Under the pieces are notes generated by a model. The model ran no database searches, was not told where the DNA came from, and was given only the letters and a program-made list of their open reading frames with translations. A program made the translations under genes and the position numbers. Shown here piece after piece: positions 13,057 through 40,996 of a stretch of 64,000 nucleotides of DNA. Each line of letters opens with the position of its first letter. Within the stretch, counting starts at the first letter, position 1. The DNA lies in the IMG/VR virus record IMGVR_UViG_3300028569_002417, positions 124,001-188,000 of that record, one strand, 5' to 3'.

Positions 13057-13686
13057 TCACCTTTTTTCTTCCGCAACACATTCTTTATTTATCAACTTGT
13101 GTCTCAATAATTTAACCACTACTAAAGCATCTTCGATTGCTGTATGAGCAACTTCTCCTGCGATGCCTGCTCTTTCCATACACTTTTTCATGTCAGGAAG
13201 AGAATCATCATTTTCCAAATCAAAATACAATATAGCAGGATCTATAGAACGATTTAGAAAATAAATGCTTCCCCAATCCTTAATTTTTGATTTAAGGAAA
13301 GGAATGTCGAAAGAAGATAAATTCTTACCTGCTGGATTTATATAAATATTGCCATTTTTATCATTTTGATTATAACCATTTTTGAGAAAAAAGGCGGTAA
13401 GAGCAGTTGGTAAATGGTCTATCGCTATAAAATGAATGTCTTGATTTGGACAATATTCCATATTTTTCTTTTTAGCCATATCAATTTTTTTGAATATTTC
13501 CGAATGCATGCTTAAGGCAAATGGATTGCCCTTGTAGTTGTCCTGCATAAATATAGCTTGGAATCGAGGAAGTTCTTCAAGTGGCTTTGGGTTTTTCAAA
13601 TCATCTAAAACAACAGCAAACTGTAATATATCGCTGTTTTCCTGAGAAAGACCTGTTGTTTCAATGTCAATGCTAGCAAATTTCAT
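13057..13686 (-). CDS. DEDDh 3'-5' exonuclease (DnaQ/oligoribonuclease-like)
   Basis: IDIETTGL (ExoI), GKNLSSFD (ExoII), HTAIEDA (ExoIII). Confidence 0.85.
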   Translation of the reverse strand: MKFASIDIETTGLSQENSDILQFAVVLDDLKNPKPLEELPRFQAIFMQDNYKGNPFALSMHSEIFKKIDMAKKKNMEYCPNQDIHFIAIDHLPTALTAFFLKNGYNQNDKNGNIYINPAGKNLSSFDIPFLKSKIKDWGSIYFLNRSIDPAILYFDLENDDSLPDMKKCMERAGIAGEVAHTAIEDALVVVKLLRHKLINKECVAEEKR

Positions 13687-18118: not shown

Positions 18119-20509
18119 TCAGCTTTTTTTCCAACTATCCCAGAATGTATTGTTCTTTATCATGTTTTCATATGTGTGTTGTGCGAACCTTCTACCAGCA
18201 TTGCCTATTCTAATGCCAGAAAGTCGAATATTTACAGAAACAAATTCATCAATTAAACAATCATCTTTTGCCCTTACATATATTTTATTATTTGAAACTT
18301 CAGCGCCGATCAATATTGGTCTGGAAGGCATTGCGCTAACAACTTGTATTGAATCATATTCACAAACCTTGATAAAATTTTCATCTATGTTGAAAACAGA
18401 AAGTACATTATTTTTACCTTCTCTACCAATATTAACAACAATTAAATCTTCAAATCTTACTTCTGGCATTTCCATACATGCCAATTCAATATATTTTTCA
18501 GAAGATCCATCATAAACAGGCAAAATAGCATTTTTAGAACCCGGCTGACCAGTTTCCCCTCTTTCGCCCTGATCTCCTTTTCGACCTTGTTGCCCTTGTT
18601 GGCCTGTAGAACCTTGATTCCCTCTATCACCTTTATCGCCTTTTACTCCTTGACGACCTTGTTCACCTTTTGGTCCTTGCAGTCCTTGATTTCCTTGACT
18701 TCCTTGATTTCCTTGTTCGCCTTGTTGACCTTGCTCACCTTGATCGCCTTGTTCGCCTTTTTCTCCTTGATGTCCTTGGTTTCCTTGATTTCCTTGATGT
18801 CCTTGATGTCCTTGATGTCCTTGGCGACCTTGATGTCCTTGATGTCCTTGGCGACCTTGGTGTCCTTGATGTCCTTGATGTCCTTGGTGTCCTTGGCGAC
18901 CTTGGTGGCCTTGATTGCCTTGGTGGCCTTGATTGCCTTGGTGGCCTTGATTGCCTTGGTGTCCTTGATTGCCTTGGTGTCCTTGATTTCCTTGATTTCC
19001 TTGATTGCCTTGATTTCCTTGATGGCCTTGATTTCCTTGGTGTCCCTGATTGCCTTGGTGTCCTTGATTTCCTTGATTTCCTTGGTGTCCTTGAAAACCT
19101 TGAAAACCTTGAAATCCTTGATTTCCTTGAAAACCTTGAAATCCTTGGTTTCCTTGAAAACCTTGAAATCCTTGGTTTCCTTGAAAACCTTGAAATCCTT
19201 GTCTACCTTGAAAACCTTGTCTTCCTTGAAATCCTTGATATCCTTGAAATCCTCTTTCTCCTTGAAAACCTTGTCTTCCTTGATATCCTTGATATCCTTG
19301 ATGACCTTGAAATCCTCTTTCTCCTTGAAAACCTTGTCTTCCTTGAAATCCTTGATTACCTTGATTGCCTCTTTCTCCTTGATATCCTTGCCTTCCTTGA
19401 AATCCTTGGCGACCTTGAGATCCTTGATTGCCTTGATAACCACGTTCTCCTTGATTTCCTTTTTCTCCTTGAGCACCAATTTCTCCTTGACGGCCTTGAC
19501 GACCTTGATTTCCTTGTAATCCTATATCGCCCTTTTCTCCTTGAACTCCAATTTCTCCTTGGCGACCTTGACGGCCTTGATTTCCTTGTAGTCCTTGATC
19601 GCCTTTTTCTCCTTGTGGACCAGTAGTTCCTATTACTCCTTGTCGTCCTTGATTGCCTTGATTTCCTTGAAAACCCTGACTACCTTTTTCACCTTGATAT
19701 CCTGATCCTTGATTTCCTTGATTTCCTTGATTTCCTTGATTTCCTTGAAAACCTTGACGGCCTTGATTGCCTTGAAATCCTGATCCCTGATTACCTTGAA
19801 ATCCTATTGATCCTTGACGACCTTGAGATCCTTGTGTTCCAAAAGCGCCTTGAAGTCCTTGAAAACCCGCTCCTTGAGAACCCGAAGATCCTTGTCGTCC
19901 TTGTTGACCTTGAACTCCAGTTGTTCCTTGCTGTCCTTGAACTCCTTTTCCTCCCTGTAATCCTTGTAGTCCTTGAACTCCTTGTAATCCTTGAGAACCA
20001 TCAAGACCTTGCAAACCTTGATATCCAGCACCTTGTAAACCTTGTAAGCCTAGATTTCCCTGAAGTCCTTGATATCCAGCACCTTGTAATCCCTGTAAAC
20101 CTTGTAGGCCAAAGCCTTGTTCGCCTTGTTCACCTTGTTCTCCCTGATCTCCTTGCGATCCTTGATAACCTGCTGGAGTCCCTTGATAACCAATAATTCC
20201 TTGATTACCTTGAACTCCAATAATTCCTTGTAAGCCTTGATTGCCTTGTGGACCTTGAACAGTACTTGCTGATCCTTGAGAACCTTGAGCTCCTTGTGAA
20301 CCTGCTCTTCCCTGTGGACCTTGAAGTCCTGTTCCCCCAGATGAACCTTGGCTACCTTGTGGACCTTGTTTTGATGCATCAACTTGTGCTGAAACAACTA
20401 AATCACGAATATCTTGTGCGGTAATACCACCTTCGCTATTGTCGGCAAATATGCACAACAATTCCTCTTCTGTCCTTAGTGTTCCCGACTGGTTACATTG
20501 ATTCGCCAT
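18119..20509 (-). CDS. collagen-like fibre protein 2 (Gly-X-Gln repeats)
   Basis: Long G-X-Q tract; start placed at MANQCNQSG (20509) to match the paralog. Confidence 0.9.
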   Translation of the reverse strand: MANQCNQSGTLRTEEELLCIFADNSEGGITAQDIRDLVVSAQVDASKQGPQGSQGSSGGTGLQGPQGRAGSQGAQGSQGSASTVQGPQGNQGLQGIIGVQGNQGIIGYQGTPAGYQGSQGDQGEQGEQGEQGFGLQGLQGLQGAGYQGLQGNLGLQGLQGAGYQGLQGLDGSQGLQGVQGLQGLQGGKGVQGQQGTTGVQGQQGRQGSSGSQGAGFQGLQGAFGTQGSQGRQGSIGFQGNQGSGFQGNQGRQGFQGNQGNQGNQGNQGSGYQGEKGSQGFQGNQGNQGRQGVIGTTGPQGEKGDQGLQGNQGRQGRQGEIGVQGEKGDIGLQGNQGRQGRQGEIGAQGEKGNQGERGYQGNQGSQGRQGFQGRQGYQGERGNQGNQGFQGRQGFQGERGFQGHQGYQGYQGRQGFQGERGFQGYQGFQGRQGFQGRQGFQGFQGNQGFQGFQGNQGFQGFQGNQGFQGFQGFQGHQGNQGNQGHQGNQGHQGNQGHQGNQGNQGNQGNQGHQGNQGHQGNQGHQGNQGHQGNQGHQGRQGHQGHQGHQGHQGRQGHQGHQGRQGHQGHQGHQGNQGNQGHQGEKGEQGDQGEQGQQGEQGNQGSQGNQGLQGPKGEQGRQGVKGDKGDRGNQGSTGQQGQQGRKGDQGERGETGQPGSKNAILPVYDGSSEKYIELACMEMPEVRFEDLIVVNIGREGKNNVLSVFNIDENFIKVCEYDSIQVVSAMPSRPILIGAEVSNNKIYVRAKDDCLIDEFVSVNIRLSGIRIGNAGRRFAQHTYENMIKNNTFWDSWKKS
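19412..19588. repeat. 177-bp near-identical block, copy 2
   Basis: Matches 17006-17182. Confidence 0.85.
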
Positions 20510-20519
20510 TTTAGCCTTG

Positions 20520-20861
20520 TTATTTGAAACTACTTGCAAATGATACGTTGAACTGTTTGTTTGTTCCGCCTATAGAATCTTGCTTTGCATTTTGACATTT
20601 TCGATAAGCCTTTAGATAAGGAATTGGATATGAAACAAATGCTCCATCACTTCTATTGGCTACGCAAATCTCAATATTTTTATAAGGAGGACACGAAAAA
20701 TAAGACTCTGGCTTGAGACAACAATCAACCAAGCCTGCTGGAATTTGACAAAAATTAGTATTTATGTTTGCCATATTGTTTACTTGAGTTAAATCCTGAC
20801 CTTTTTCAATTTGTTTAAGAGCAACATCTGGTACTAAAGCACCTTTCAAATAAGTATCCAC
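20520..20861 (-). CDS. Cys-containing hypothetical protein heading the fibre operon
   Basis: GTG 20861 follows SD AAGGAGG; CTAAATA motif upstream. Confidence 0.65.
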   Translation of the reverse strand: MDTYLKGALVPDVALKQIEKGQDLTQVNNMANINTNFCQIPAGLVDCCLKPESYFSCPPYKNIEICVANRSDGAFVSYPIPYLKAYRKCQNAKQDSIGGTNKQFNVSFASSFK

Positions 20862-22107: not shown

Positions 22108-23040
22108 ATGCGTCATTTCCTGTCTATTTCCGACTTCACTAAAGATCAAATTGAAACTGTTTTAGAAATTGCGACAGACATTGAAAAGAATTGGGAATTT
22201 TGTCGCCAAATGAACAACAAATGTATTTCTTCGTTTTTTGCAGAACCTTCTACTAGAACCAGATTTTCATTCGAGAGAGCAATGCATTGGCTTGGAGGAA
22301 GATGTGTCACAGCTGCTGATGCATCTTCAAGTAGCAGTTTAATCAAAGGCGAAAGTCTCAAGGACACATTTCGCACTCTTGGTCAGTATTCTGACGCTAT
22401 CATTATGCGTCATGGTGATTCAAGCTGGCCAGAAATAGCAAGAGCATATTCTCGTGTTCCAGTAATTAATGCAGGAAGTGGATCTGGAGAACATCCAACA
22501 CAAGCACTTCTTGACCTTCATACAATTAAACAAAAATGGAAAGATGTCAGTAATCTCAAGGTTATGTTGTGTGGAGATCTTAAAAACGGAAGAACAATAC
22601 ACAGTCTTATTGAACTTCTTCACATTTATGGTTGCAAAATATATTATTGCGCTGCCACTGATCATGCAGATTGTGATTTGAGCATACCTGAAAAATACCT
22701 TGCAAATATTCCTTGTAAAAATGTTGAAATATGTGACGCAAATGACATTCTTCCAGAAATCGATGTCATTTATATGACCAGAATCCAAAAAGAAAGATTC
22801 AAAGGTGTCAGTGGTTCTCTAGATTTCTTTAAGATTGACAAAACCAATATCAATAAAATCAAAGAAAACGCTGCTATTCTTCATCCTCTTCCTAGAAACG
22901 AAGAAATTAGTGAAGATATAGATGATGATTCTCGTGCTGACTATCACGAAAGACAAGTCAGAAATGGTCTTTATATAAGAACTGCTCTTTTAGATTATAT
23001 TCTTTACACAAGTCCTTTACACAGATACTACAGATCATAA
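22108..23040 (+). CDS. pyrB: aspartate carbamoyltransferase catalytic subunit
   Basis: FFAEPSTRTRFSFE, HPTQALLD, GDLKNGRTIHS, YMTRIQKER, HPLPR. Confidence 0.95.
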   Translation: MRHFLSISDFTKDQIETVLEIATDIEKNWEFCRQMNNKCISSFFAEPSTRTRFSFERAMHWLGGRCVTAADASSSSSLIKGESLKDTFRTLGQYSDAIIMRHGDSSWPEIARAYSRVPVINAGSGSGEHPTQALLDLHTIKQKWKDVSNLKVMLCGDLKNGRTIHSLIELLHIYGCKIYYCAATDHADCDLSIPEKYLANIPCKNVEICDANDILPEIDVIYMTRIQKERFKGVSGSLDFFKIDKTNINKIKENAAILHPLPRNEEISEDIDDDSRADYHERQVRNGLYIRTALLDYILYTSPLHRYYRS

Positions 23041-23811: not shown

Positions 23812-24699
23812 ATGAAAATAGCATTTTGCCCATTAGTTAGTCGTGATATGGACAAGGCAATTCGTGCCACAAATTCTTGTCGTAATCAATTTCCAACCGA
23901 ATCCATTGAAATAGAAACAGTTGCAATTATCAATTCTCAGAATCAAGAATTTGTTTCTCAGTTTTCAGAATGGTGTGAAAAAGAGAATGTCAAATATAAA
24001 ATTACTCAGTCAAATGGTACTCCGAGTAAGGGAAAAAATTCTGTATTAAATTTTTTACAAAACTCAAATTATGATGGTCTGAGTCTTACTGATGGAGACG
24101 ACCTATTTTACCCAACAGGTGCAATTCAAATTGAAAAACATATGAAACATCACCCCGGAACTGATGTTTTGATTGTTAAACCTGCCGATCATGTTTCAAA
24201 TGAAAAAACAAATACTTCTAAGGAAGTTGGAGAAAATAAATATGCAGTATGCTGGGGTATGAATGTTGTTAATCTTGGATATAAATATGGACCCGGAAAG
24301 CACGATATATTTACATCTGGACACAAAGCAGCAAGAAATTTAGGTGGACATGTCTTTTATAGCAAAAAATTAAGCAATATGATAAGATATGACGAAGAAC
24401 AGGTTTTAGGAGAAGATTTACTTCTTGAATTTAATCTTCTTAAACTTCATCAACAAAATAAAATATCATTTTGGTTAAGTTTTGCTAGTGATGTTCAGAT
24501 GTTAGACAGAACAAAGCAAGAAAGCATACAAAATCTTAAGAATGAAAGTTTAGGTAAAATTTGTTTTGAAAGATTGATTAAAAAAGTAAAAGAAATATTA
24601 CCTGAAGATAGAAGTTCATTTAATGAATTGCCAGTAGAGTTTCCCGAAATTATTTTTAATCATGATCGAAAAATTGAATGGTTGAAACAAGTCTTTTGA
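23812..24699 (+). CDS. GT-A fold glycosyltransferase-like protein
   Basis: SNGTPSKGKNSVL, TDGDD DxD-like motif, GEDLL. Confidence 0.7.
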   Translation: MKIAFCPLVSRDMDKAIRATNSCRNQFPTESIEIETVAIINSQNQEFVSQFSEWCEKENVKYKITQSNGTPSKGKNSVLNFLQNSNYDGLSLTDGDDLFYPTGAIQIEKHMKHHPGTDVLIVKPADHVSNEKTNTSKEVGENKYAVCWGMNVVNLGYKYGPGKHDIFTSGHKAARNLGGHVFYSKKLSNMIRYDEEQVLGEDLLLEFNLLKLHQQNKISFWLSFASDVQMLDRTKQESIQNLKNESLGKICFERLIKKVKEILPEDRSSFNELPVEFPEIIFNHDRKIEWLKQVF

Positions 24700-24723
24700 C
24701 ATTCCCATAAAAGATGGTATAAT
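24696..24723 (+). promoter_or_regulatory. consensus sigma70 promoter with extended -10
   Basis: TTGACA (24696-24701), 16 nt, TATAAT (24718-24723), TG at 24715-24716. Confidence 0.8.
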
Positions 24724-24729
24724 AGATAT

Positions 24730-25150
24730 GGCAGTCCCAAGCTTTGGCGTGAAAGGTCTCGTACTACCTTGAATGTTGAAGTTGCTAAACCTGTGAGGCT
24801 CTCACCAAGAGCGGGTCTTTGTAGTTGTTTCTACAACAAATGCTGTAACGGGCAGCATTGTTCTCACAAGCAACATAGGTCAAGCCAGATAGCATCGATG
24901 CTGACTTCTATGACTATAGTGTATCCCACTAGCAAACACTCATGTCATAGACTATCTGGTTTTAAGATTGTTGCAAAAGAAAGTACGCTACTCTTCATCA
25001 CCACTAATCTTTTTGCTGGAGTAAGTAAGATTAAAGAACAAAAACAAAGCTTAAACGCTAAATTTTTGCTCTACTAATCTTGTTTACTCAATAAGTCATT
25101 ATTCTTAATGATTTATACAGTAATAACCATTAGGGTCAGCATCCCGTTCT
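24730..25150 (+). ncRNA. candidate large structured non-coding RNA, class unknown
   Basis: Starts just after a consensus promoter; at least 9 nested helices plus long-range complementarities; no credible ORF; 3' end uncertain. Confidence 0.6.
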
Positions 25151-25296
25151 GGAATTTGATTGTAAATAAAAGTTTCTCAAAAATATTTTCATGTTGTTAA
25201 TGAAGAATTTGTTTAGTATGACATTTGTAAATCCGTTCATCAATGAATGAAGGGATAAGGCTAGAAGGCTCAAAATTGACTTAGGAGTGATTATCT

Positions 25297-26631
25297 ATGA
25301 ACTTTGAGTCTCTGGCCAAGTTGCTTACAGAAATCGACCACAAGACCCTATTCTTGCGATTTAATCCTGAGGTTCTTGATTTCACAGACAAGGAATCGTC
25401 TTGTGAGCTTCAGTTCTTTATTCCTGATGGTCGAATCTTCAAGATTGAGTTGAAAGATGAGACTATGCCTTTGATTCTAAGCTTCTTGGGTATATCTTTG
25501 TTTGAAAAAGATTGCAAAATATTTACTTGGAATTGGAAGTGTTTTGCTTCTTATGTTTTTGCTAAGAAGAACAAGTTTTATGACATAAAGGCTTCTATTG
25601 TTGATATCAAGATAATTGAGTCATTTAGCGGTATAAAGAAGAATGCTCCTGAAAGTTATGTTGAGGCTTTCAATAGAATAAAGAATTTAGTTTCTTCTGG
25701 TTTGTGGAAGGAAAGTGAGAATATTTACAAGAACATTCATCTTCCTTTGATGACAACAGTTATACCAGCATTGGAGAAGATAGGTATTGTTGATTCTTCT
25801 TTGCATTCTAAGGTTCATGCTTATTACGAGATTGATGGGCAGGACAATGGTCGATTGAAGTGTTTCGGTGCCTTCAAGAATTCTTATGTTCCTCACACAA
25901 TGGGATCTGAACTGAAAGAAGTTTTGAGGCCTGTTGGTTACGATAATTTTTTTATGAGTTTTGACTTTAAGGGGATGGAAGTATTTGTTTTGGCGCATTT
26001 GAGTAAGGATCGAAATTTATTGAGACTTTGCGATCAGGAAGACATATATCTTTCCTTGTATAGGGTTTTAATTGGACAGGAGAAGGAAAAAAATGATAGG
26101 GAATTGGCAAAAAAATGTTTTTTGCCGGTTATATATGGACAGTCAGCCCGATCACTTTCTTTGAGATGTGGTTTGGCGGCTGATGTGGCCGAAAAAGTGG
26201 TGGAACGAATTAGTTCTTTGTTTCCTGCTGCTATTTCATTTGTTGCCGATTGCGAAAGCAAAGTTAAAAAAGATGGATATGCAAAGGATTTCTTCGGTAA
26301 GAGAAGAACAAACTTTGAGGTTGGGAAGGAATACCTTGCCAGAAATTTTGCAGTGCAGTCTCCTGCTGCGACGATATGCCTAGAGAAACTTATCAGTTTA
26401 TATTTTTGTTTGCAAAAACTCAATGAGTCATTGAAAGATAAAGCTGAAATTGCTTATACTGTTCATGACGGATATGTTGTTTATGCCACAAAGGAAAACT
26501 GGAAGCAAGTTTACAAAAAATGTATGGATGCTTTGACTAGTGAATCTGAGTTGTGTCCCGGCCTTAAGCTGAAAGTTTCATGCAAAGGAGGACGCAATCT
26601 AAATGATCTAAAGGTTATAAAAAACGGCTAG
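25297..26631 (+). CDS. polA: divergent family A DNA polymerase, thumb deleted, exonuclease degenerate
   Basis: DNGRL, motif A SFDFKGMEVFVLAHLSKD, motif B RELAKKCFLPVIYG, NFAVQSPAA, motif C TVHDGY. Confidence 0.85.
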   Translation: MNFESLAKLLTEIDHKTLFLRFNPEVLDFTDKESSCELQFFIPDGRIFKIELKDETMPLILSFLGISLFEKDCKIFTWNWKCFASYVFAKKNKFYDIKASIVDIKIIESFSGIKKNAPESYVEAFNRIKNLVSSGLWKESENIYKNIHLPLMTTVIPALEKIGIVDSSLHSKVHAYYEIDGQDNGRLKCFGAFKNSYVPHTMGSELKEVLRPVGYDNFFMSFDFKGMEVFVLAHLSKDRNLLRLCDQEDIYLSLYRVLIGQEKEKNDRELAKKCFLPVIYGQSARSLSLRCGLAADVAEKVVERISSLFPAAISFVADCESKVKKDGYAKDFFGKRRTNFEVGKEYLARNFAVQSPAATICLEKLISLYFCLQKLNESLKDKAEIAYTVHDGYVVYATKENWKQVYKKCMDALTSESELCPGLKLKVSCKGGRNLNDLKVIKNG

Positions 26632-26642
26632 AGGATTAAGAA

Positions 26643-27194
26643 ATGCTTGATATTGTACACAATTTCCCCATTACTGAAGCTGAATTTTTTGATTTGGATA
26701 AGAAGTTTTCAAAGCTTTGCTGGCATGCTGCTCATGAATTGAAGAAAAAGAATACAAACAATAATTTTCTTGATGATGCAGAAGACATCAAACAAGAATT
26801 ACAAATGAGTATGCTTCGTGCTGGAAGTTATTATAAGCGTCAGGTTTATATCGAGAAATGCTTTGAAATTGCCAAGAATTATGTGAGTGATCAATTCATC
26901 ATGAAGGTTCTTAAAGAGCTTGAGAATCTTTGGAGCAATAGAACCAGACATGGTGCAAATAGGCAGAAGTATGGTCATTTCCAAGAAAAGATACTTGACA
27001 GAATAATTAACAAGTTTGTGCCTAAAGAACATAGGCCTAAGAAGGATGCTCCTTTGAAGATTGACAGTAAGTTTACAACATATTGCAAGGCAATTGTGTG
27101 GAACGGTCAGAAGAGCATGGGCAAAAAGATTACCCGTGAAAAATCGATTCGTAGCGGTATGGTTTCACTAAGCGAGTTTGATTTCTTACATTGA
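26643..27194 (+). CDS. sigma70 region-2-like protein, possible phage sigma factor
   Basis: DAEDIKQELQMSMLRA (2.1/2.2-like), SKFTTYCKAIVWN (2.3/2.4-like); no region 4 HTH. Confidence 0.5.
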   Translation: MLDIVHNFPITEAEFFDLDKKFSKLCWHAAHELKKKNTNNNFLDDAEDIKQELQMSMLRAGSYYKRQVYIEKCFEIAKNYVSDQFIMKVLKELENLWSNRTRHGANRQKYGHFQEKILDRIINKFVPKEHRPKKDAPLKIDSKFTTYCKAIVWNGQKSMGKKITREKSIRSGMVSLSEFDFLH

Positions 27195-27210
27195 GATTAA
27201 TATAATATCT

Positions 27211-27309
27211 TGAGCAGCATAGTTCGCCGTCCTGACCATATTTTATAAAATACATTTAATTAATTTACATAGTCCGATCTAATGGCTGAGTTTAACGGCG
27301 TGCTGCTCA
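27211..27309 (+). ncRNA. candidate ~100-nt hairpin RNA or origin-like inverted repeat
   Basis: TATAAT at 27201-27206; TGAGCAGCA/TGCTGCTCA and GCCGT/ACGGC arms; T-run after 27309. Confidence 0.45.
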
Positions 27310-27378
27310 TTTTTTTCAAATCAATCTGGATCATTCCATATTTTGTGCTATTCTGGTGTGAGCCTATAGGAATCATAG

Positions 27379-28908
27379 ATGCGTGAACTCACACCAGAAG
27401 AACAAGCCCAACTTGAGTCAATGACTGACCCAGAGGTGGTCAAATCAAAGTTTGCATGGGACGATACTTTTCAGCGCAGACTCTTAGCAATGCTTTTAAC
27501 TGATGATTACATGCTTATTCAGTCGATGGATAAAATAAAGCCAGAATATTTCAGCAATGAATCTCATATTCTTATTTGTCGAATTCTTTTGACTTATTTT
27601 ACCAAAGAAAAATTTAGACCTAAAGATTGGATCATATCTCAAGAACTTACCAATCTTCTAAAGGATCGTGATCGCACAATTCAGTTGCATTATCAGGCCG
27701 AACTCAAAAGCATATATGACTATTACGTTCCGGGAGTTGATTCCCGTGAATACTTGATCGACAAAGTAACATATTTCGCTAAAGTTCAAGCTGTAAAGCT
27801 TGCTTTCCATTCTAGTTTGGAAAAAATGCAAGAAGCTCCTGAGGATGAAAAGACATGGAGTTTTGTTTACGAAAAAATGCGTGAAGCAATGCTTATCGAC
27901 AGGAGCTACGAACCCGGTCTTGAATACTTCATGAACATTGATGAAATGTTTCGTCGTATGGACGATGTATTTGTCGGTAAAGACAGATTCACATCAGGTT
28001 TCCCAGCAATTGATAATGCTTTAACTGGTGGTGGATTATTTGCTGGTCAGATAGCAAGTTGGATTGGTTTGCCGGGAACTGGTAAATCATTAGCCTTAGT
28101 AAAGGCGGCTGTTGAAAATGTACTCTTGGGCCATAAGGTTCTTTATATCACGTTGGAAATGGATGAACTTGGCATTGTGCAGCGTTTTACAAGTCAGTTC
28201 GCAAAGAAGGACATCAATAATCTTCGTGACATGAAAGATGAAATCAAAGCAACTATCGAAGAATTCAAGAAGGACAAGGCAGATCCTAACCTTTTGCATG
28301 TCAAGCAGTTTCCCGGTGGTCAGATTGATGTTAACGGCATAAGAGCCTACATGGCTCAGTTGGAGCTAAGAGGATGGAAACCTAATGTTTTAATTGTTGA
28401 CTATGTTGGTGAAATGAAAGACGATCCATCAGTTAAAAAATATGAAAGTGCCTATCGTATTTTGCGTGATCTTCGTGGTTATGGAGTTGAAAAAGGTCAC
28501 TGCACTTTCACATGCGTTCAGCCAAATCAAACAGCCGCAAAGCTTGAAATTGGACAATTTATTGATGAGTCTAATATCGGCACAAGCTTTGATCAGTTCA
28601 AGCCTCTTGATGCTTTTTGGTCAATTAATCAGCAGGTTTTGGAGAAGGATGCTGAAGTTGGAAGGGTTTTTGTCATTAAGCATAGGAATGGTAGATCAAG
28701 GTTCGCATTCAAGATTGGCTTTGATTATAAGATTGGTACTCTTGATATGTTTGAAATATCGAAGGATACATATCGTGAAAGAATGAACTTGGTTCAAGAA
28801 AAGAAAGCTGAAGAAGTTACTATGGACAATGTAGGCGATGCTCCTTCGGGTAAGAGGCAGCGCAGTAAAAAGGGATTTGTTCCAGAAGAAGACACCTACG
28901 AGGCATAA
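27379..28908 (+). CDS. dnaB: replicative DnaB/gp41-like helicase
   Basis: GLPGTGKS Walker A, VLYITLEM, LIVDY, VIKHRNG. Confidence 0.9.
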   Translation: MRELTPEEQAQLESMTDPEVVKSKFAWDDTFQRRLLAMLLTDDYMLIQSMDKIKPEYFSNESHILICRILLTYFTKEKFRPKDWIISQELTNLLKDRDRTIQLHYQAELKSIYDYYVPGVDSREYLIDKVTYFAKVQAVKLAFHSSLEKMQEAPEDEKTWSFVYEKMREAMLIDRSYEPGLEYFMNIDEMFRRMDDVFVGKDRFTSGFPAIDNALTGGGLFAGQIASWIGLPGTGKSLALVKAAVENVLLGHKVLYITLEMDELGIVQRFTSQFAKKDINNLRDMKDEIKATIEEFKKDKADPNLLHVKQFPGGQIDVNGIRAYMAQLELRGWKPNVLIVDYVGEMKDDPSVKKYESAYRILRDLRGYGVEKGHCTFTCVQPNQTAAKLEIGQFIDESNIGTSFDQFKPLDAFWSINQQVLEKDAEVGRVFVIKHRNGRSRFAFKIGFDYKIGTLDMFEISKDTYRERMNLVQEKKAEEVTMDNVGDAPSGKRQRSKKGFVPEEDTYEA

Positions 28909-31289: not shown

Positions 31290-31879
31290 GAAGACCAAAT
31301 ATTGATCTGTTTTTCAAATTTACATATTTGCTTTTTATAAAATAAATCAACTCTTTTTTTCAGTTGAGATTCCCAATCTTCTTGACATTCTGAAGTAAGA
31401 AGAAATTTCTTGTTTTTATCTTTTATTTGAAGTTGTCCATATCCAAGAGCTCCAATTGTGAGATTATTCCAGTCTAATTCACAAATATTAAAAACCTTTA
31501 CATCTAAAATTTCCACTAAATCTTTATTTCTTTTGTAATCAACAAAAATATAATTTAAGCTTTGGTTTTTGTTTTGGAAAAACTTTTTGAGTCTTTTTAC
31601 CGATATAAGGTTTGGCATCGAAAATCCAGCTTTTTCTTGGACATGATGTGTCTTGACATCGTAGAAAACATATTTTTTTTCAAATGGAATTATAAAGTCT
31701 TCTATTGATCTTTTGCTTTTGGCGGGGGAGAATCGTTCTTTGAATTGATATTCAACTATTTTAGAGCAAAGATTTTCTATCTTATCTCCTACAGCACGAT
31801 GAGAAAAAGTCTCGTCAATTGTGAAATTTTTGAGATTTTCAGCGATTATATTTTTTATTTCTAAATTCAAAATCATCAA
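31286..31879 (-). CDS. PD-(D/E)XK restriction endonuclease-like protein (HincII/EcoRV-like)
   Basis: RAVGDKIE, IEDF...YDVKT, PNLISVKRL, GQLQ. Confidence 0.55.
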   Translation of the reverse strand: MMILNLEIKNIIAENLKNFTIDETFSHRAVGDKIENLCSKIVEYQFKERFSPAKSKRSIEDFIIPFEKKYVFYDVKTHHVQEKAGFSMPNLISVKRLKKFFQNKNQSLNYIFVDYKRNKDLVEILDVKVFNICELDWNNLTIGALGYGQLQIKDKNKKFLLTSECQEDWESQLKKRVDLFYKKQICKFEKQINIWSS

Positions 31880-32883
31880 ATGATCTCTTCTTTTATCAAT
31901 TCTAAATTTGTAGATGAAATAAGTCCAGCGATAGGATATTTTCTTATGAGATTTTCAAAACCTTGAATAATTTGATCAGATTTAAGTTCTGTGATGCAAG
32001 GTTTTTGCATCTCTTTGCTTTTTGGGCAAACAATGCAAAGATAACATGGTCCGCATTCCCAATCGCCGTTATCACGATGTTTTTGCACAAGCTCAAAATC
32101 GTAATGTCTACCGTAAACCTTTCCATCAGTGAAAGAAAAAACACCAACTAGAGGTTTTTTTAACGCACCAGCAAGATGAAATGTTCCAGTATCAATTGAT
32201 ATTACATAATCTGCCGCTGCAACTAGCCCTTTCCAAGATTCAGGTTCAATTTTTATAAATTGTGGAATATTTATGCTTGTAAAAATTTCAAGAGGTTCAT
32301 TGTGAATGGTATAAACAAAAAATCCTTTATCACATAGTTTTTTGCATACTTCATATATTTGTGTGTCTGTTAAGCTTTTTGATTGTCCAAACATACATTT
32401 GGTTGATTTGGCCGCAACTAAAACCATTGGAAGCTTTTTAGTGTTTATTTCATATAATTTTTCAATATAAAATTCTTTTTCTTTGCATTCCATGAAGCAG
32501 TTATGGTTTGAAAGCTTAACACCACAATGATTGGCCCAGATATCGCTACGGTGAATGGTGTTTTTACCTCCCATTTTACTTTCATGCACACGACACACTG
32601 TCGTTATGTCATATGATGCTCCATATGTTCTTTCATTGATTTCTTCTATTGCCACTGTTTTTGCATAAGGATGATCTTTAGCAAATTCTAAATATGTTCT
32701 AGGACAGGCATATGTTAAATTAATTTCAGGCATTACCTTATGAAAATCTTCAAACATCATTCTTTGCATAATGATGTCGCCATATCCACCTGCTTTTCTC
32801 TTGATGAGGACTTTATTCCTTCTGAGAAAATGTTCTTTTATCGTGATTGGACAAATAGTTTTTTTCTTAACGTAAGGAAACAT
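31876..32883 (-). CDS. GT9 (heptosyltransferase-like) glycosyltransferase
   Basis: GGYGDIIM, ADYVISIDTGTFHLAGALKKPLVGVF. Confidence 0.85.
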   Translation of the reverse strand: MFPYVKKKTICPITIKEHFLRRNKVLIKRKAGGYGDIIMQRMMFEDFHKVMPEINLTYACPRTYLEFAKDHPYAKTVAIEEINERTYGASYDITTVCRVHESKMGGKNTIHRSDIWANHCGVKLSNHNCFMECKEKEFYIEKLYEINTKKLPMVLVAAKSTKCMFGQSKSLTDTQIYEVCKKLCDKGFFVYTIHNEPLEIFTSINIPQFIKIEPESWKGLVAAADYVISIDTGTFHLAGALKKPLVGVFSFTDGKVYGRHYDFELVQKHRDNGDWECGPCYLCIVCPKSKEMQKPCITELKSDQIIQGFENLIRKYPIAGLISSTNLELIKEEII

Positions 32884-33057
32884 ATATATCTTGTCTCTTT
32901 TTTACTACCTCAGTATTACAATTATACAAGTTCCAGCTGTCTGCATGGATGTTTGATCTTTATGTAATGCTTGAAACCCTAATGCAGGAAAAGGATGCTT
33001 CAAGGCACTTTTCAAAGGTAATTCAACTAAGTTTAATTGAAAACTTGAAATTGAGAC

Positions 33058-33089
33058 AGAGAGGTTAACCTTGTTGGTTCAACCTCTCT
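33058..33089 (-). terminator. hairpin immediately after the glf stop
   Basis: AGAGAGGTT/AACCTCTCT plus AACC/GGTT; no clear U-tract. Confidence 0.45.
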
Positions 33090-34212
33090 ATACAAATGTT
33101 CTAAACTTAGTTAATGCCGAAGCAATTGTCTGGTCGATGTCCAGATATTTATATTCACCAAGCCTTCCTCCAAAAGTAATTTCTTTGTGATTTGTTTTAA
33201 GATTGGCATATCTGTTGTATAAGTCACTGTTTTTATCATCTCTGATTGGGTAGTAAGGCTCAGGATGATCTTTGAATGCAACTGGGATGTCATAGGAAAC
33301 AACAGTTTCTTCTTTTGAATGTGGTTTTACTTCATAGTGTTTTGGAGCATTTTTGTAAAAATGCTTGTGTTCTATTGTTCTTATGTGTGGCACAGACATA
33401 TCTGTGTGGTTAAAAACAGCATTTCCTTGATAGTCACCATATATTGTTTTGTGTTCAAATCTTAAAGTGTTGTATTCCAAAGATCCAAACTCATAGTCGT
33501 AAAATTTATCTATCGGTCCTGTGTAAACCAGATGTTTGGCATAATCACGCCATTTGTTTCTAATTGTGAAAAAATCAGTGTTGAGTTCTGTTTTAATTCC
33601 ATCAAGCATATTTTTTATTGTTGCTGAGTATCCTTCATTTGGAATGCCTTGATATTTTGTTGTAAAATAATTTTCTTCATAAGTGAGTCTGATTGGCAGT
33701 CTCTGAATTATTGAGGATGGAAGATCTCTAGGTTCTTTCATCCATTGTTTTTTAGTGTATCCATAAAAGAATAATTCATAGATTTCCTTGCCAACTCTGT
33801 CTAAAGCCCATTCTTCAAAGTTTCTAGGATTTTCGCATGGTATTCGCACATCTTGTAGTTTGCGGTATGCTTCTTCTGGAGTGACAACTCCCCATAGTTG
33901 ATGAAGAGTCATCATGTTAATTGGAAATGAATAAACATTTCCTTGAGACAAAACTTTTGGTTTATTGATGAAAGGGTTGATTTTCGTGAATTTATTGATG
34001 AAATCCCATACTTCTTCGCTTTGAGTGTGGAATATGTGTGCTCCATATTCGCTTACAATGATGCCATTGTCCCATTTTCGGTCATATGTCGCACCAGCAA
34101 TGTGATTATTTTTATCAATTACAAGGCACTTTTTACCAGCATCTGCTGCTTTTCTTGCAAAGGTAGCGCCAAAGAATCCTGATCCCACAATCATGAAGTC
34201 AAATTCAGGCAT
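33088..34212 (-). CDS. glf: UDP-galactopyranose mutase
   Basis: IVGSGFFGA, HIAG, YGAHIFHT, YFTTKYQGIP, EPYYP, GRLGEYKYLD. Confidence 0.95.
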   Translation of the reverse strand: MPEFDFMIVGSGFFGATFARKAADAGKKCLVIDKNNHIAGATYDRKWDNGIIVSEYGAHIFHTQSEEVWDFINKFTKINPFINKPKVLSQGNVYSFPINMMTLHQLWGVVTPEEAYRKLQDVRIPCENPRNFEEWALDRVGKEIYELFFYGYTKKQWMKEPRDLPSSIIQRLPIRLTYEENYFTTKYQGIPNEGYSATIKNMLDGIKTELNTDFFTIRNKWRDYAKHLVYTGPIDKFYDYEFGSLEYNTLRFEHKTIYGDYQGNAVFNHTDMSVPHIRTIEHKHFYKNAPKHYEVKPHSKEETVVSYDIPVAFKDHPEPYYPIRDDKNSDLYNRYANLKTNHKEITFGGRLGEYKYLDIDQTIASALTKFRTFV

Positions 34213-36963: not shown

Positions 36964-37020
36964 AAATAAAATATTTTTGTATTTGGGCTAAAGTTTTTTG
37001 TAGTTTCATGTGATAATAAT

Positions 37021-37048
37021 ACGGCGATGCCAACAAAGACATCGTCGT
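37021..37048 (+). promoter_or_regulatory. hairpin in the SSB leader
   Basis: ACGGCGATG/CATCGTCGT stem with a 10-nt loop, about 25 nt before the ATG. Confidence 0.5.
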
Positions 37049-37072
37049 ATTACTTTTTACTATGAGGCCACT

Positions 37073-38071
37073 ATGTCACTTGACTTTGAACCACTTGATC
37101 TGTCTGAGATTAACAAAGAGGCTAAAAGAGTCTCTGAAGAAGGCGCAGCCGCTGGAAACAGTGGTGATTATCTTGATAAATTCGTCAAGATGCCTGACCG
37201 TGATGGGTTTGTAATCATGCGTGTTCTTCCCCGCAAAAAGGGTGGAAGCGTATGGTGTGCAACTCGTGTACACACTCTCACTAATCCTGATACACGCAGC
37301 AAAAAGACCTACCATTGCCCACGCAAGTTGGTTGAAACCGACAAGGGTGAAAGATGGATGGGCGATTGCATTATTTGCAAGTATTACAGTGATTTGTGGC
37401 AGAAGTCTGAAAGTCTTTCTGGTAAAGCCCAAGAGGATCTTCAGAATCAAGCCAGAGCAATCAAGCCTGTAGAACGATATTACTACAATGTAATTGTTCG
37501 TTCTGAAAAGGACAAAGAAGGCAACATTAAAAAGAATGTCGGACCCAAGATATTCTCTTGCGGTAAGACAACCCACGCCAAGATCATGCTTGCCATGCGT
37601 GGAGACGAAGCAGCTGGTGAAAAGCCACTTGGAGACATCACTCATCCAAAGGATGGACGTGACTTCAGAGTCGTTAAGAAAGTTATCAAGGGTGGTGGAG
37701 GGATGGAATATCCCAACTACGATAACAGCAAGTTTGAAGAACCAACACCTGCTGGAAACCTTGATGAATTGAAATCATGGATGGAAAGCATTCATGATCT
37801 TCAGGCTCTTCGTGTGATCAAGACTTCAGATGAATTGAAGCAAGCACTTCGTGTTCATCTTGGCATGGTCAAAGAAGGACCAGCTGCCAATGATACAGAA
37901 CTCGATGAATTCAGGAAAGCAGGATCTGCTACTCCTTCCAAACCTAAAGCAGTTGAGACAATTCGTGAAGAATTAGTCGTCAGCAGCACTCCTCCTGTTG
38001 CTAAAGAAGAGTCAAAACCAAGCGATGATCTCGCCGATGACGACTTCCTGAAAGAACTTTCAGGCATGTAA
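37073..38071 (+). CDS. gp32-like single-stranded DNA-binding protein
   Basis: MRVLP, H...CP...C.IC Zn site, RYYYNV, GPKIFSCG, GRDF, YPNYDNSKF, acidic C-tail DDLADDDFLKEL; ATG 37073 after SD GAGG. Confidence 0.85.
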   Translation: MSLDFEPLDLSEINKEAKRVSEEGAAAGNSGDYLDKFVKMPDRDGFVIMRVLPRKKGGSVWCATRVHTLTNPDTRSKKTYHCPRKLVETDKGERWMGDCIICKYYSDLWQKSESLSGKAQEDLQNQARAIKPVERYYYNVIVRSEKDKEGNIKKNVGPKIFSCGKTTHAKIMLAMRGDEAAGEKPLGDITHPKDGRDFRVVKKVIKGGGGMEYPNYDNSKFEEPTPAGNLDELKSWMESIHDLQALRVIKTSDELKQALRVHLGMVKEGPAANDTELDEFRKAGSATPSKPKAVETIREELVVSSTPPVAKEESKPSDDLADDDFLKELSGM

Positions 38072-38146: not shown

Positions 38147-39364
38147 ATGGCAAAGAAAAAGATAAGCGAAGGCGTGGATGATAATTTTTTTGAAAATCTC
38201 GCAGAAGAAACCGGAGGCGATGTTCTTGATGCAATCGACTCAGTCAAGTATTTTGTTGACACAGGAAGCTTAGCACTTAATTATATTTGCTCAGGTCAGT
38301 TCATCACTGGAGGAATTCCCGGTGGTAAGTTGACTGAAATATATGGTCCAAACAGTTCATCCAAGTCTCTTCTTGGTGCCAATATTTTGTTTGGCACACA
38401 GAAAGTCAAAGGCATTCCTGTCCTCATGGATTGTGAAAATAGCGCCAACAAAGAATTCATTCAGATTGCAAGCCATTGTAATTTGAAGCGAATAGTAAGA
38501 CATACTCCAGAAACACTGGAAGCAGTTTTTTCAACAATGTACAGGGTTATTGAAAAAGCCCGTGAAAAAACAAGCAATGAAGTTCCTATCGTCATTGTTT
38601 ATGACTCGATTGGAGTAAGCCCCTCTGCCCGTGAACTTCGTGAAGTTGCTCTTCCAGAAAACTACACGAAAGAACAGTTCAAAAAGATTGTAGGGGGAAA
38701 TGAACAACCCGGTGAAAGAGCTAAAATTTGCTCAAGAGAATTAAGAAAACTCAACACGGTTATGGAGAAACATAACGCAACAGTTGTGATTCTTAACCAG
38801 ACTCGTGATAAAATTGGAACTTACATCCCCACCAAAACAACTGCTGGTGGTGGAAATGCCCTTCCTTTCTACGCATCTTGTCGTCTTGAAACCAAGACAA
38901 TGCAGAAAATAGAAAAGAAGATAAGCGCCAAAAAGAAGAAGATTCTTGGGATTAATGTGAAGCTCAAGAATGTTAAAAATAAGACTCACAGACCTTTTGT
39001 TGAGTCTGAGAATGTTCAGCTTCTTTTTGATAAGGGAATCAATCCAATTAGTGGACTTCTCTCTTGTTTATTAGATGCTGATAGGATTGAAATATCAGGA
39101 ACAGGATCATTTAAGGTTAAGCCTGCTTTTTCTAATGGTGAAGAAGTTAAATTCCGTGCAAGCATGGATCGCAATGATGTTCCTATGGACATTTTGCTAA
39201 AATGCCCAGCACTCATTGATGCCAGCACATCTGAACAGGTTGAGACTTATCTCGAACCTTATAAGCTGGCAATTGCTAGTAGAGCAGAAGATGATTCTGA
39301 TGTTGAATTGAGTGAAACTGATTCTTACGACGATGAAAACATCGACGAAGAATTAGAAGGATAA
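38147..39364 (+). CDS. recA: RecA/UvsX-like recombinase
   Basis: DTGSLALN, GGIPGGKLTEIYGP, IVYDSIG, ILNQTRDKIG, GGNALPFYAS. Confidence 0.9.
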   Translation: MAKKKISEGVDDNFFENLAEETGGDVLDAIDSVKYFVDTGSLALNYICSGQFITGGIPGGKLTEIYGPNSSSKSLLGANILFGTQKVKGIPVLMDCENSANKEFIQIASHCNLKRIVRHTPETLEAVFSTMYRVIEKAREKTSNEVPIVIVYDSIGVSPSARELREVALPENYTKEQFKKIVGGNEQPGERAKICSRELRKLNTVMEKHNATVVILNQTRDKIGTYIPTKTTAGGGNALPFYASCRLETKTMQKIEKKISAKKKKILGINVKLKNVKNKTHRPFVESENVQLLFDKGINPISGLLSCLLDADRIEISGTGSFKVKPAFSNGEEVKFRASMDRNDVPMDILLKCPALIDASTSEQVETYLEPYKLAIASRAEDDSDVELSETDSYDDENIDEELEG

Positions 39365-39372
39365 TCAAAAAA

Positions 39373-39404
39373 GTTTGAGGGGCATGAAAAAATGCCCCTC
39401 AAAC
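39373..39404. terminator. hairpin/terminator between convergent genes
   Basis: 13-bp stem GTTTGAGGGGCAT/ATGCCCCTCAAAC. Confidence 0.75.
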
Positions 39405-40888: not shown

Positions 40889-40948
40889 TGATTGCTCCTT
40901 GTGTCTTGATGACACTTGTCTAAATAATTATAGGGAAATGCAAATAAA

Positions 40949-40977
40949 TTGCCACTCATCTTGGCTATTCTTATAAT
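40949..40977 (+). promoter_or_regulatory. sigma70-type promoter
   Basis: TTGCCA, 17 nt, TATAAT. Confidence 0.65.
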
Positions 40978-40996
40978 GTAATATGGAGGCATTTCG

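What the first reader, a model, noticed from the sequence alone, without database searches (positions are those of the whole stretch)
25297..26631. Thumb-less, exonuclease-degenerate family A polymerase with altered motifs
Only about 8 residues separate LEKIGIVD from KVHAYY, where E. coli Pol I has roughly 100 residues of thumb (ERNGVKID...GRVHTSY). The N-terminal exo-like part lacks the ExoII Asp (FTWNWKCF). Both catalytic Asp remain (motif A DFKGME; motif C HDG instead of HDE). Motif B RELAKKCFLPVIYG places Leu at the 762-equivalent site with Pro next to it. A processive replicase is unlikely. Inference: a repair, primer-handling or nucleotide-modifying enzyme, or one subunit of a split polymerase; a stand-alone DEDDh exonuclease lies at 13057-13686.
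Basis: partly seen in the sequence, partly recalled or inferred. Interest (0 to 1): 0.75.

Follow-up and report, generated by a model that had tools for sequence, protein, structure and literature searches.

The report
Thumb-less phage DNA polymerase A family
A huge phage carries a short Pol I-like DNA polymerase that keeps its catalytic core but has lost the whole thumb and its proofreading site; it is always paired with a small basic helical protein, sits in the replication-recombination gene cluster, and exists alongside a separate Pol III-type replicase.

Summary
ORF 25297-26631 (444 aa) is a family A polymerase. E. coli Pol I has 104 residues between ERNGVKID and GRVHTSY; this protein has 5. 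A confident AlphaFold model (pLDDT 92.5) matches KlenTaq and Bst large fragments at Z about 31 and has no thumb hairpin. Catalytic and DNA-contact residues are kept. E883 is Gly and F762 is Leu. The N-terminal domain is a shrunken exo fold without the catalytic carboxylates.

This is not a local deletion. A profile search finds 245 cluster representatives at E<=1e-30. The 150 listed match the thumb-less profile essentially end to end; most are about 400-450 aa.

The genome is a 225-kb fragment of a huge phage. It also encodes a DnaE-type Pol III alpha in three pieces, so this PolA is probably an accessory polymerase.

In 9 of 9 loci the gene is followed within -20 to +50 nt by a more conserved 183-aa basic helical protein. 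DnaB, a gp32-like SSB and a RecA-like gene lie nearby.

The closest published thing is 'divPolA1' (Virol J 2024): truncated thumb, dead exo, extra to a regular polymerase. Common descent with it is not shown. I rate this a new variant of a known kind, of moderate interest.

The parts
25297..26631 (+). Thumb-less, exonuclease-dead family A DNA polymerase, 444 aa
   Evidence: ORF. Pfam PF00476 at 102 bits, profile positions 101-379 only. AF2 pLDDT 92.5. VIA Z 30-31 to KlenTaq and Bst large fragments with 390-413 residues aligned. 245 representatives at E<=1e-30.
25297..25701 (+). Residues 1-135: reduced 3'-5' exonuclease-like (RNase H-like) domain without catalytic carboxylates. W78, W80, K81, D28, D103, K105 and E108 are invariant.
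   Evidence: Secondary structure beta1-3/alphaA/beta4/alphaB/beta5/alphaC. Family invariants. No PF01612 match in the genome. Full-length structural alignment to Bst 304-876 includes this domain.
25771..25827 (+). Thumb junction: LEKIGIVD (159-166), then 5 residues, then KVHAYY (172-177). E. coli Pol I has 104 residues at this point (549-652).
25957..25980 (+). Motif A, SFDFKGME (221-228): D223=D705, E228=E710 (steric gate)
   Evidence: Alignment A2. Invariant in A1.
26098..26139 (+). Motif B / O-helix, RELAKKCFLPVIYG (268-281): R268, K272, L276 (=F762), P277, Y280, G281
26458..26472 (+). Motif C, TVHDG (388-392): H390, D391, and G392 in place of E883
   Evidence: HDG is also present in distant members P0266 and P0289.
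26643..27194 (+). p183: conserved 183-aa all-helical protein. Its C-terminal half is very basic and it has a conserved disordered tail ...SLSEFDFL. It is the candidate partner subunit.
   Evidence: Directly downstream of the PolA gene in 9 of 9 loci, with gaps of -20 to +50 nt. 63-71% identical where PolA is only 36-50% identical. At least 784 homologous clusters with no Pfam domain. AF2 pLDDT 80.7, all helices. No PDB fold match. pI 10.3 for residues 95-183.
27379..28908 (+). DnaB-like replicative helicase, 509 aa
   Evidence: Pfam DnaB_C at 5e-8, PHROG 19 at 3e-48. Follows PolA-p183 in 8 of 9 loci.
24696..24723 (+). Perfect sigma70-type promoter match TTGACA-16-(TG)TATAAT, at the start of the ORF-free leader
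   Evidence: 12 of 12 positions. This is a consensus match only.
24730..25180 (+). Conserved, probably structured RNA leader or ncRNA upstream of the PolA gene
   Evidence: An ORF-free stretch of 530-760 nt is present at this place in all six loci checked for it: window, L007, L008, L017, L018, L019. Conserved DNA blocks. RNAalifold finds 99 pairs, 29 with compensatory changes, in 4 sequences. No Rfam hit.
37010..38071 (+). gp32-like ssDNA-binding protein (same replication-recombination module)
   Evidence: Pfam gp32 at 5e-11. The same gene lies downstream in L008.
38147..39364 (+). RecA/UvsX-like recombinase
   Evidence: Pfam RecA at 2e-32.
13057..13686 (-). Stand-alone DEDDh (RNase_T family) exonuclease. 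Its partner is unknown and could equally be Pol III alpha.
   Evidence: Pfam RNase_T at 7.8e-8.

Best explanation
The gene encodes an active, DNA-templated, dNTP-using family A DNA polymerase derived from a Pol I/Klenow-type enzyme. It has lost the entire thumb (about 100 residues), the proofreading active site and any 5'-3' nuclease domain. It belongs to a large family confined to huge and jumbo phages. It is not the phage's main replicase; a DnaE-type Pol III alpha fills that place. Most likely it works as a short-patch, low-processivity polymerase inside the replication-recombination module (DnaB helicase, gp32-like SSB, UvsX/RecA-like recombinase), extending primers or invading 3' ends and filling short gaps. 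It probably acts as a two-protein unit with the co-transcribed basic helical protein p183, which I infer supplies the DNA grip or tether that the missing thumb would give.

Shown: the architecture, the residue conservation, the family-wide absence of a thumb, the presence of Pol III alpha, and the PolA-p183 gene linkage.

Inferred: catalytic activity, low processivity, physical partnership with p183, and the exact substrate.
For: Architecture.

Catalytic and DNA-contact residues are invariant across 34 members at 46-79% identity. These are D223, E228, R186, R268, K272, Y280, N350, Q354, H390 and D391.

Family-wide trait: 120 of 120 listed hits are 369-487 aa. There are 245 representatives at E<=1e-30. 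The 150 listed match the thumb-less profile essentially end to end apart from a few short, apparently partial entries.

Nearest shapes outside its own cluster are bacterial Pol I, TM 0.82.

A second polymerase exists: PF07733 in three ORFs of the same genome, and an intact 1183-aa copy in LR756511.1. There is no PolB.

Context: PolA-p183-DnaB, plus gp32-like and RecA-like genes in the window.

p183 linkage and properties.

Published parallel: divPolA1 has a truncated thumb and an inactivated exo, is encoded in addition to a regular DNAP, and has replication genes downstream (PMC11348598). The immuto phage locus shows divPolA1, two small ORFs, SSB, recombinase, 5'-3' exo and DnaB.
Against: There is no biochemical evidence of any kind.

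E883 is Gly throughout the family. From my own knowledge, E883 mutants of Klenow lose much of kcat, so activity may be low or altered.

No FEN (PF02739), RNase H1 (PF00075) or NAD ligase (PF01653) was found in this genome fragment or in LR756511.1. A self-contained Pol I-like Okazaki-maturation role is therefore not supported by context.

p183 has no detectable similarity to a thumb, an SSB or any solved fold. Atlas leads point weakly to sigma70 region 2, so it may be a transcription factor that is only a neighbour.

Co-occurrence with Pol III alpha was checked in only two genomes. The window's genome is about 52% complete.
Confidence: 0.55

Rival explanations
1. It is the phage's principal replisome polymerase. 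Processivity would be supplied in trans by p183, DnaB or a clamp, while the Pol III alpha is auxiliary or a repair enzyme.
For: The gene sits at the head of the conserved replication gene block. The Pol III alpha of this genome is fragmented and lies among unrelated genes. The divPolA1 paper makes the same point: the conserved replication context belongs to divPolA1, not to the 'regular' DNAPs.
Against: It has no thumb and no proofreading, and the genome is about 400-600 kb. No clamp was detected. LR756511.1 keeps an intact full-length Pol III alpha with a PHP domain. The intein-containing pieces here look like a spliced, functional gene.
Confidence: 0.13
2. It is a primer-independent initiator (primase) like the CcPol-MP / PolA-SSB primases or TV-Pols, with p183 delivering single-stranded template and DnaB as the cognate helicase.
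For: The gene order polymerase, small protein, helicase mirrors CcPol-MP-Cch2, and the exo domain is truncated and dead (PMC7581432 and PMC10061031). Loss of the thumb would open the site for an initiating nucleotide (inference).
Against: p183 is all-helical, not an OB fold. The relative LR756511.1 has a DnaG-like primase with a Zn ribbon and a Toprim domain. The minor-groove primer-terminus contacts (R668, N845, Q849, H881 equivalents) and the steric-gate Glu are conserved, as in primer-dependent DNA polymerases.
Confidence: 0.1
3. It is a polymerase specialised for non-canonical or modified nucleotides or templates. The Leu762 and HDG changes would adapt the active site, in a phage rich in glycosyltransferase, methyltransferase and deaminase genes.
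For: The motif B and motif C substitutions are family-invariant. Many sugar- and base-modification genes lie nearby: GT families, GLF, Amidoligase_2, and dCMP deaminase in relatives.
Against: Nothing links these genes to DNA modification. This rival does not explain the loss of the thumb.
Confidence: 0.08
4. It is a catalytically dead scaffold or DNA-binding protein derived from a polymerase.
For: The E883-equivalent carboxylate is lost, and so are the thumb and the exo activity.
Against: Both metal-binding Asp residues, the O-helix Arg/Lys/Tyr and the steric-gate Glu are strictly conserved over deep divergence. That is not expected for a pseudo-enzyme.
Confidence: 0.05
5. It is an assembly artefact or a recent local deletion in this genome.
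For: None.
Against: The same length and junction appear in hundreds of independent contigs, including 444-595 kb ones.
Confidence: 0.01

Closest known systems
divPolA1 of Flavobacterium phage vB_FspM_immuto and relatives ('DNA polymerase swapping in Caudoviricetes bacteriophages', Virol J 2024, PMC11348598)
   Same: It is about 441 aa, with a truncated thumb and the exo catalytic Asp residues replaced. It is encoded in addition to a regular DNAP of family A, B or C, and it heads a block of replication genes: small ORFs, SSB, RecA-like, DnaB. Its motif C also lacks the Glu (YDA there, HDG here).
   Different: There is no BLASTP similarity. Profile-profile comparison gives probability 92%, E 5e-7. 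That is weaker than this family against Klenow (97.6%, E 4e-12), so a common thumb-less ancestor is not shown. divPolA1 keeps Phe at B3 and has lost the steric-gate Glu; this family has Leu at B3 and keeps the Glu. The hosts are 155-190 kb phages there and 400-600 kb phages here. The small downstream proteins are unrelated to p183.
Bacterial DNA polymerase I large fragment (Klenow, KlenTaq, Bst LF)
   Same: It is the best sequence and structure match, with Z about 31 and 390-413 residues aligned, including the vestigial exo domain as in Taq and Bst. Motifs A, B and C and the minor-groove contact residues are the same.
   Different: The protein here has no thumb (104 residues reduced to 5) and no 5'-3' nuclease domain. 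E883 is Gly and F762 is Leu. The exo-like domain is about 135 aa.
CcPol-MP / PolA-SSB primases of SCCmec and Bacillota mobile elements (eLife 2020, PMC7581432; Front Mol Biosci 2023, PMC10061031)
   Same: It is a PolA catalytic domain with a truncated, inactive N-terminal domain. A small partner gene lies immediately downstream, followed by a helicase gene.
   Different: The partner here is helical, not an OB fold. The helicase is DnaB-type. A DnaG-like primase coexists in a relative. CcPol keeps a thumb, with only its last helix predicted to be shorter.
divPolA2 of barbaviruses (same 2024 paper)
   Same: It is an accessory PolA without a recognisable thumb, beside a regular polymerase.
   Different: divPolA2 lacks the exo domain altogether, has a novel N-terminal globular domain and resembles RNA polymerases. 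This protein keeps the exo-like fold, and its hits are DNA polymerases.

Membership tests
Family A DNA polymerase (Pfam PF00476) | Significant match to the DNA_pol_A profile above the gathering score | tested here: met
   102.1 bits against a cut-off of 34.3, E 4e-29.
Family A DNA polymerase (Pfam PF00476) | Motif A Asp, motif C Asp, and motif B Arg/Lys/Tyr | tested here: met
   D223, D391, R268, K272 and Y280 align to D705, D882, R754, K758 and Y766 and are invariant in 34 sequences.
Family A DNA polymerase (Pfam PF00476) | Right-hand fold with palm, fingers and thumb | tested here: not met
   Palm and fingers are present (Z about 31). The thumb is absent: 5 residues in place of 104.
Bacterial Pol I (full length) | N-terminal 5'-3' exonuclease/FEN domain | tested here: not met
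   The protein starts at the exo-like domain. There is no PF02739 match anywhere in the genome fragment.
Bacterial Pol I (proofreading type, Klenow) | DEDD carboxylates of ExoI, ExoII and ExoIII | tested here: not met
   There is no PF01612 match. F83 sits at the D424 position. The D355 and D501 positions are non-acidic, judged by position in the predicted strands and helices. No residue-level superposition was done.
divPolA1 (Virol J 2024) | Truncated thumb plus inactivated 3'-5' exo with an intact palm | tested here: met
divPolA1 (Virol J 2024) | Encoded in addition to a regular DNAP, with replication genes downstream | tested here: met
   Pol III alpha. DnaB, gp32-like and RecA-like genes downstream.
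divPolA1 (Virol J 2024) | Sequence-level kinship with immuto-type divPolA1 beyond generic PolA similarity | tested here: inconclusive
   BLASTP E 1.2. hhalign probability 92%, E 5e-7, which is weaker than the match to Klenow. No phylogeny was made.
CcPol-MP / PolA-SSB primase | Small partner protein with an OB fold encoded next to the polymerase | tested here: not met
   The partner gene is present, but its model is all-helical and has no OB-fold hits.
CcPol-MP / PolA-SSB primase | Primer-independent synthesis | not testable with these tools
   This needs a biochemical assay.
TV-Pol (Iyer, Abhiman, Aravind 2008) | Specific TV-Pol sequence signature and N-terminal domain | not tested
   The family was only read about. 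No TV-Pol sequence was compared.

The most novel reading that the evidence does not exclude
PolA and p183 form an obligate two-subunit polymerase. The co-translated basic helical protein would replace the deleted thumb in trans, or tether the thumb-less core to a clamp or helicase through its conserved ...SLSEFDFL tail. That would be a new kind of split family A holoenzyme, used by huge phages next to a Pol III-type replicase. It might start from the conserved structured RNA encoded just upstream, as a primer or operator.
Probability: 0.2. Interest if true: 0.75.

Novelty: new variant of a known kind. Interest (0 to 1): 0.55.

Why it matters
As far as I know, the thumb is present in every biochemically studied family A polymerase, where it sets DNA affinity, processivity and frameshift fidelity. 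A large natural family that has removed it completely but keeps every catalytic residue under selection is a ready-made experiment on what a thumb-less PolA can do. It also bears on how huge phages divide labour between a Pol III-type replicase and a second polymerase. The strict pairing with a more conserved basic helical protein gives a concrete, testable candidate for a new polymerase accessory subunit. The enzyme is compact (444 aa) and exo-minus, so it may also have practical uses. Part of the surprise is gone, because a similar architecture (divPolA1) was described computationally in 2024.

Tried and rejected
1. Local deletion or misassembly. Rejected: the trait is family-wide.

2. p183 as an MP/SSB-like OB-fold partner. 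Rejected: the model is all helices.

3. p183 as a detached thumb. hhalign against Klenow finds nothing. This is uninformative rather than negative.

4. p183 as a T4 gp55-type late sigma factor. The sizes are similar and so are the C-terminal tails (SLSEFDFL here, SLDFLYE in gp55). But there is no profile similarity and no Pfam or PHROG hit. The atlas gives only a weak lead to sigma70 region 2. Left open.

5. The small ORFs after immuto divPolA1 as p183 homologues. No similarity.

6. Clamp search (beta-clamp domain 3, T4 gp45), FEN, RNase H1 and NAD ligase in this genome and in LR756511.1. Nothing found. Divergent phage versions could have been missed.

7. DnaG-like primase in the window's own genome. 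Not found, but the record is only about half a genome.

8. N-terminal extensions of 80-120 aa in some distant members. No Pfam domain, so no fusion clue.

9. Rfam, tRNA and tmRNA scans of the upstream leader. No hit.

10. L007 and L008 whole records could not be searched for Pol III alpha.

I removed that row and sent the job again.

Full report
**Where the window lies.** The window is bases 124001-188000 of a 225,527-bp IMG/VR virus record. CheckV rates the record about 52% complete, which implies a phage of roughly 400 kb or more. The best GenBank phage match to the protein is the 595-kb uncultured phage LR756511.1. Metagenomic relatives sit on contigs of 444 and 513 kb.

**The observation.**
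- ORF 25297-26631 (+) is 444 aa and has a good ribosome-binding site.
- Pfam DNA_pol_A matches at 102 bits, but only over residues 166-435, and these match profile positions 101-379 of 381.
- I took E. coli polA from NC_000913.3 as a ruler. ERNGVKID is 541-548 and GRVHTSY is 653-659, so 104 residues lie between them.
- In the window protein LEKIGIVD is 159-166 and KVHAYY is 172-177, so 5 residues lie between them.
- A profile of 34 family members aligns to Klenow only from residue 169 onward, corresponding to Pol I 651-926 (probability 97.6%, E 4e-12).
- An AlphaFold2 model built on that alignment is confident (pLDDT 92.5, pTM 0.92). It runs from a long helix (136-162) directly into the palm strands, with no helical hairpin between them.
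- The model superposes on KlenTaq and Bst large fragments at Z about 30-31, with 390-413 of 444 residues aligned against chains of 538-581 residues.

**Residue mapping** (alignment A2; conservation from A1).
- D223=D705 and E228=E710, the steric-gate Glu.
- R186=R668.
- R268=R754, K272=K758, L276=F762 followed by P277, Y280=Y766.
- N350=N845 and Q354=Q849.
- H390=H881 and D391=D882.
- G392 stands in place of E883.
- All are invariant or nearly so across members that are 46-79% identical. HDG is also seen in far more distant members.

**The N-terminal domain.** The first 135 residues fold like an RNase H-like/DEDD exonuclease domain, and they are included in the full-length structural alignments. 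No DNA_pol_A_exo1 match exists. ExoII reads W-N-W-K-x-F, with Phe where D424 would be. The positions expected for D355 and D501 are not acidic. This last point rests on position within the predicted strands and helices, not on a residue-level superposition. The best structural matches, Taq and Bst, are themselves enzymes with a vestigial exo domain.

**Not an accident of this genome.**
- The word-indexed search returned 232 clusters at E<=0.001. The 120 listed are 369-487 aa, with a median of 439.
- An exhaustive profile search of 1.84 billion representatives gave 245 at E<=1e-30.
- The 150 listed are nearly all about 400-450 aa and match the 438-position profile essentially end to end. A few shorter entries look partial, and a few have an extra 80-120 aa at the N-terminus. 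That extension has no Pfam domain.
- No thumb-bearing member was seen.
- In the ESM Atlas the protein's own cluster (211 members, viral) matches at TM 0.97. The next shapes are bacterial Pol I at TM 0.82.
- BFVD has no twin of about 440 aa among its top 50.

**Other polymerases.**
- There is no family B polymerase in the record.
- Pol III alpha (PF07733) is present outside the window, in three ORFs at G000:C1 196713-197984, 202198-203517 and 204568-207087.
- These ORFs carry the PHP domain, the alpha NTPase halves, the finger halves, HHH and intein-splicing signals. Unrelated genes and a TnsA-like endonuclease lie between them.
- LR756511.1 has an intact 1183-aa frame matching the Pol III alpha profile. 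It also has a 337-aa DnaG-like primase with a Zn ribbon and Toprim_2, beside its own 428-aa thumb-less PolA.
- So the phage clade has a conventional candidate replicase and primase, and the thumb-less PolA is an additional polymerase.

**Context.**
- In nine loci (window, L007, L008, L010, L014, L015, L017, L018, L019) the PolA gene is followed directly by a gene for a protein of about 185 aa. The gap ranges from -20 to +50 nt.
- Two of these loci were reached by starting from the small protein, not from PolA.
- This protein, p183 (window 26643-27194), is 63-71% identical where PolA is only 36-50% identical.
- It has at least 784 homologous clusters and no Pfam or PHROG family.
- It is predicted to be all-helical (pLDDT 80.7), with two long helices (12-38 and 46-80) and a conserved but disordered tail.
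- It has no significant PDB fold match.
- Its C-terminal half has a pI of 10.3.
- A DnaB-like helicase follows in eight of the nine loci (window 27379-28908).
- A gp32-like SSB and a RecA/UvsX-like recombinase lie 8-10 kb downstream.
- FEN, RNase H1, NAD ligase, beta-clamp domain 3 and T4 gp45 homologues were not found in this record or in LR756511.1.

**How it most likely works.**
- Every residue needed for templated dNTP addition and for reading the primer-terminus minor groove is conserved, and so is the steric-gate Glu. This argues for an active, primer-dependent DNA polymerase.
- Without the thumb it should hold duplex DNA weakly and act distributively. From my own knowledge, even a partial thumb-tip deletion in Klenow lowers DNA affinity, processivity and frameshift fidelity. 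It cannot proofread.
- A Pol III alpha is present and the gene heads the helicase-SSB-recombinase block. I therefore think it is a replisome- or recombination-associated short-patch polymerase that extends primers or invading 3' ends.
- It probably works with p183 as a DNA-binding or tethering partner.
- The partnership, the substrate and the low processivity are inferences. A classical Pol I-like Okazaki-maturation role is not specifically supported, because no phage FEN, RNase H or ligase was found.

**Comparison with what is known.**
- The closest published description is divPolA1 (Virol J 2024). It has the palm residues kept, the thumb truncated and the three exo Asp residues replaced. It is encoded in addition to a regular family A, B or C polymerase and has a conserved replication gene block downstream.
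- The isolate example, Flavobacterium phage immuto_3-5A gene 1, is 441 aa. It is followed by two small ORFs, an SSB, a recombinase, a 5'-3' exonuclease and DnaB.
- The two families share the architecture and the context.
- By sequence they are no closer to each other than to Pol I: BLASTP finds nothing. Profile-profile comparison gives 92%, E 5e-7, against 97.6%, E 4e-12, for this family versus Klenow.
- Their motifs differ: F versus L at B3, steric-gate Glu lost versus kept, YDA versus HDG.
- The small downstream proteins are unrelated.
- I therefore file the window protein as working like divPolA1, with membership unproven.
- The CcPol-MP primases share the gene order polymerase, small protein, helicase. 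They fail on the partner's fold, and a DnaG-like primase coexists in a relative.
- The 19-cluster reclassification of PolAs describes 'broken' thumbs but, in the passages I read, no thumb-less subfamily.

**Verdict.** Its interpretation is partly supported. The feature is real, under selection and widespread in huge phages. Its general architecture has a 2024 computational precedent. This particular family, its Pol III alpha companion and its strictly linked partner protein are, as far as my searches go, undescribed, and none of them has been studied biochemically.

Noticed in passing
window 24696-25296 (also L017 2438-3000, L018 2296-3000, L019 2466-3000, L007 9245-10000): An ORF-free stretch of about 600 nt lies upstream of the PolA gene and is present at this place in all six loci checked for it. 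It begins with a perfect TTGACA-16-TG-TATAAT promoter match. It contains long DNA-conserved blocks and a multi-helix structure, with 29 of 99 predicted pairs showing compensatory changes in only four sequences. There is no Rfam, tRNA or tmRNA hit. It could be a leader or operator of the PolA-p183 operon, a new ncRNA, or a primer or origin RNA.
   Followed up: partly
G000:C1 196713-207087 (outside the window; locus L005 6713-17087): The DnaE-type Pol III alpha is split into three ORFs separated by unrelated genes and a TnsA-like endonuclease gene. Intein-splicing signals are found at the end of piece 2 and inside piece 3. This suggests split and contiguous inteins, that is, assembly by trans-splicing. 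The relative LR756511.1 has one intact 1183-aa gene.
   Followed up: partly
window 26643-27194: p183 ends in a strongly conserved tail, G-K-K-I-T-R-E-K-S-I-R-S-G-x-V-S-L-S-E-F-D-F-L, that is predicted to be disordered. Its last residues resemble the C-terminal tail of T4 gp55 (SLDFLYE), which from my own knowledge contacts the gp45 clamp. No profile homology to gp55 was found, and no clamp gene was found.
   Followed up: partly
window 14348-18094 (-) and 18119-20539 (-): Two very large proteins (1248 and 806 aa) consist largely of collagen triple-helix repeats (Pfam Collagen, E 1e-90 to 1e-103). They account for the local rise in G+C (0.41-0.44) and the strong negative GC and AT skew at 16-20 kb.
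   Followed up: no
window 22108-23040: An aspartate carbamoyltransferase (PyrB-like) gene lies just upstream of the PolA block. It lies at the same relative place in LR756511.1, L017 and L019. It is an auxiliary pyrimidine-synthesis gene conserved in this phage clade.
   Followed up: no
window about 27210-27320: The 184-nt gap between p183 and the DnaB-like gene holds an inverted repeat (GAGCAGCA ... TGCTGCTC) followed by a run of seven T. It is a possible terminator, which would make PolA-p183 a two-gene transcription unit.
   Followed up: no
window 31876-34212, 39399-42019: This is a cluster of sugar- and modification-type genes: GT9-like heptosyltransferase, UDP-galactopyranose mutase, a Fringe-like glycosyltransferase and Amidoligase_2. 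Similar genes, plus a dCMP deaminase, flank the PolA block in relatives. Whether they modify DNA or surface glycans is unknown.
   Followed up: no
proteins P0256, P0266, P0269, P0289, P0317 (distant family members): Some distant thumb-less PolAs carry an extra N-terminal segment of 80-120 aa with a conserved LPR(Y/F)K...KWVGKTKI(F/L)G stretch and no Pfam match.
   Followed up: partly
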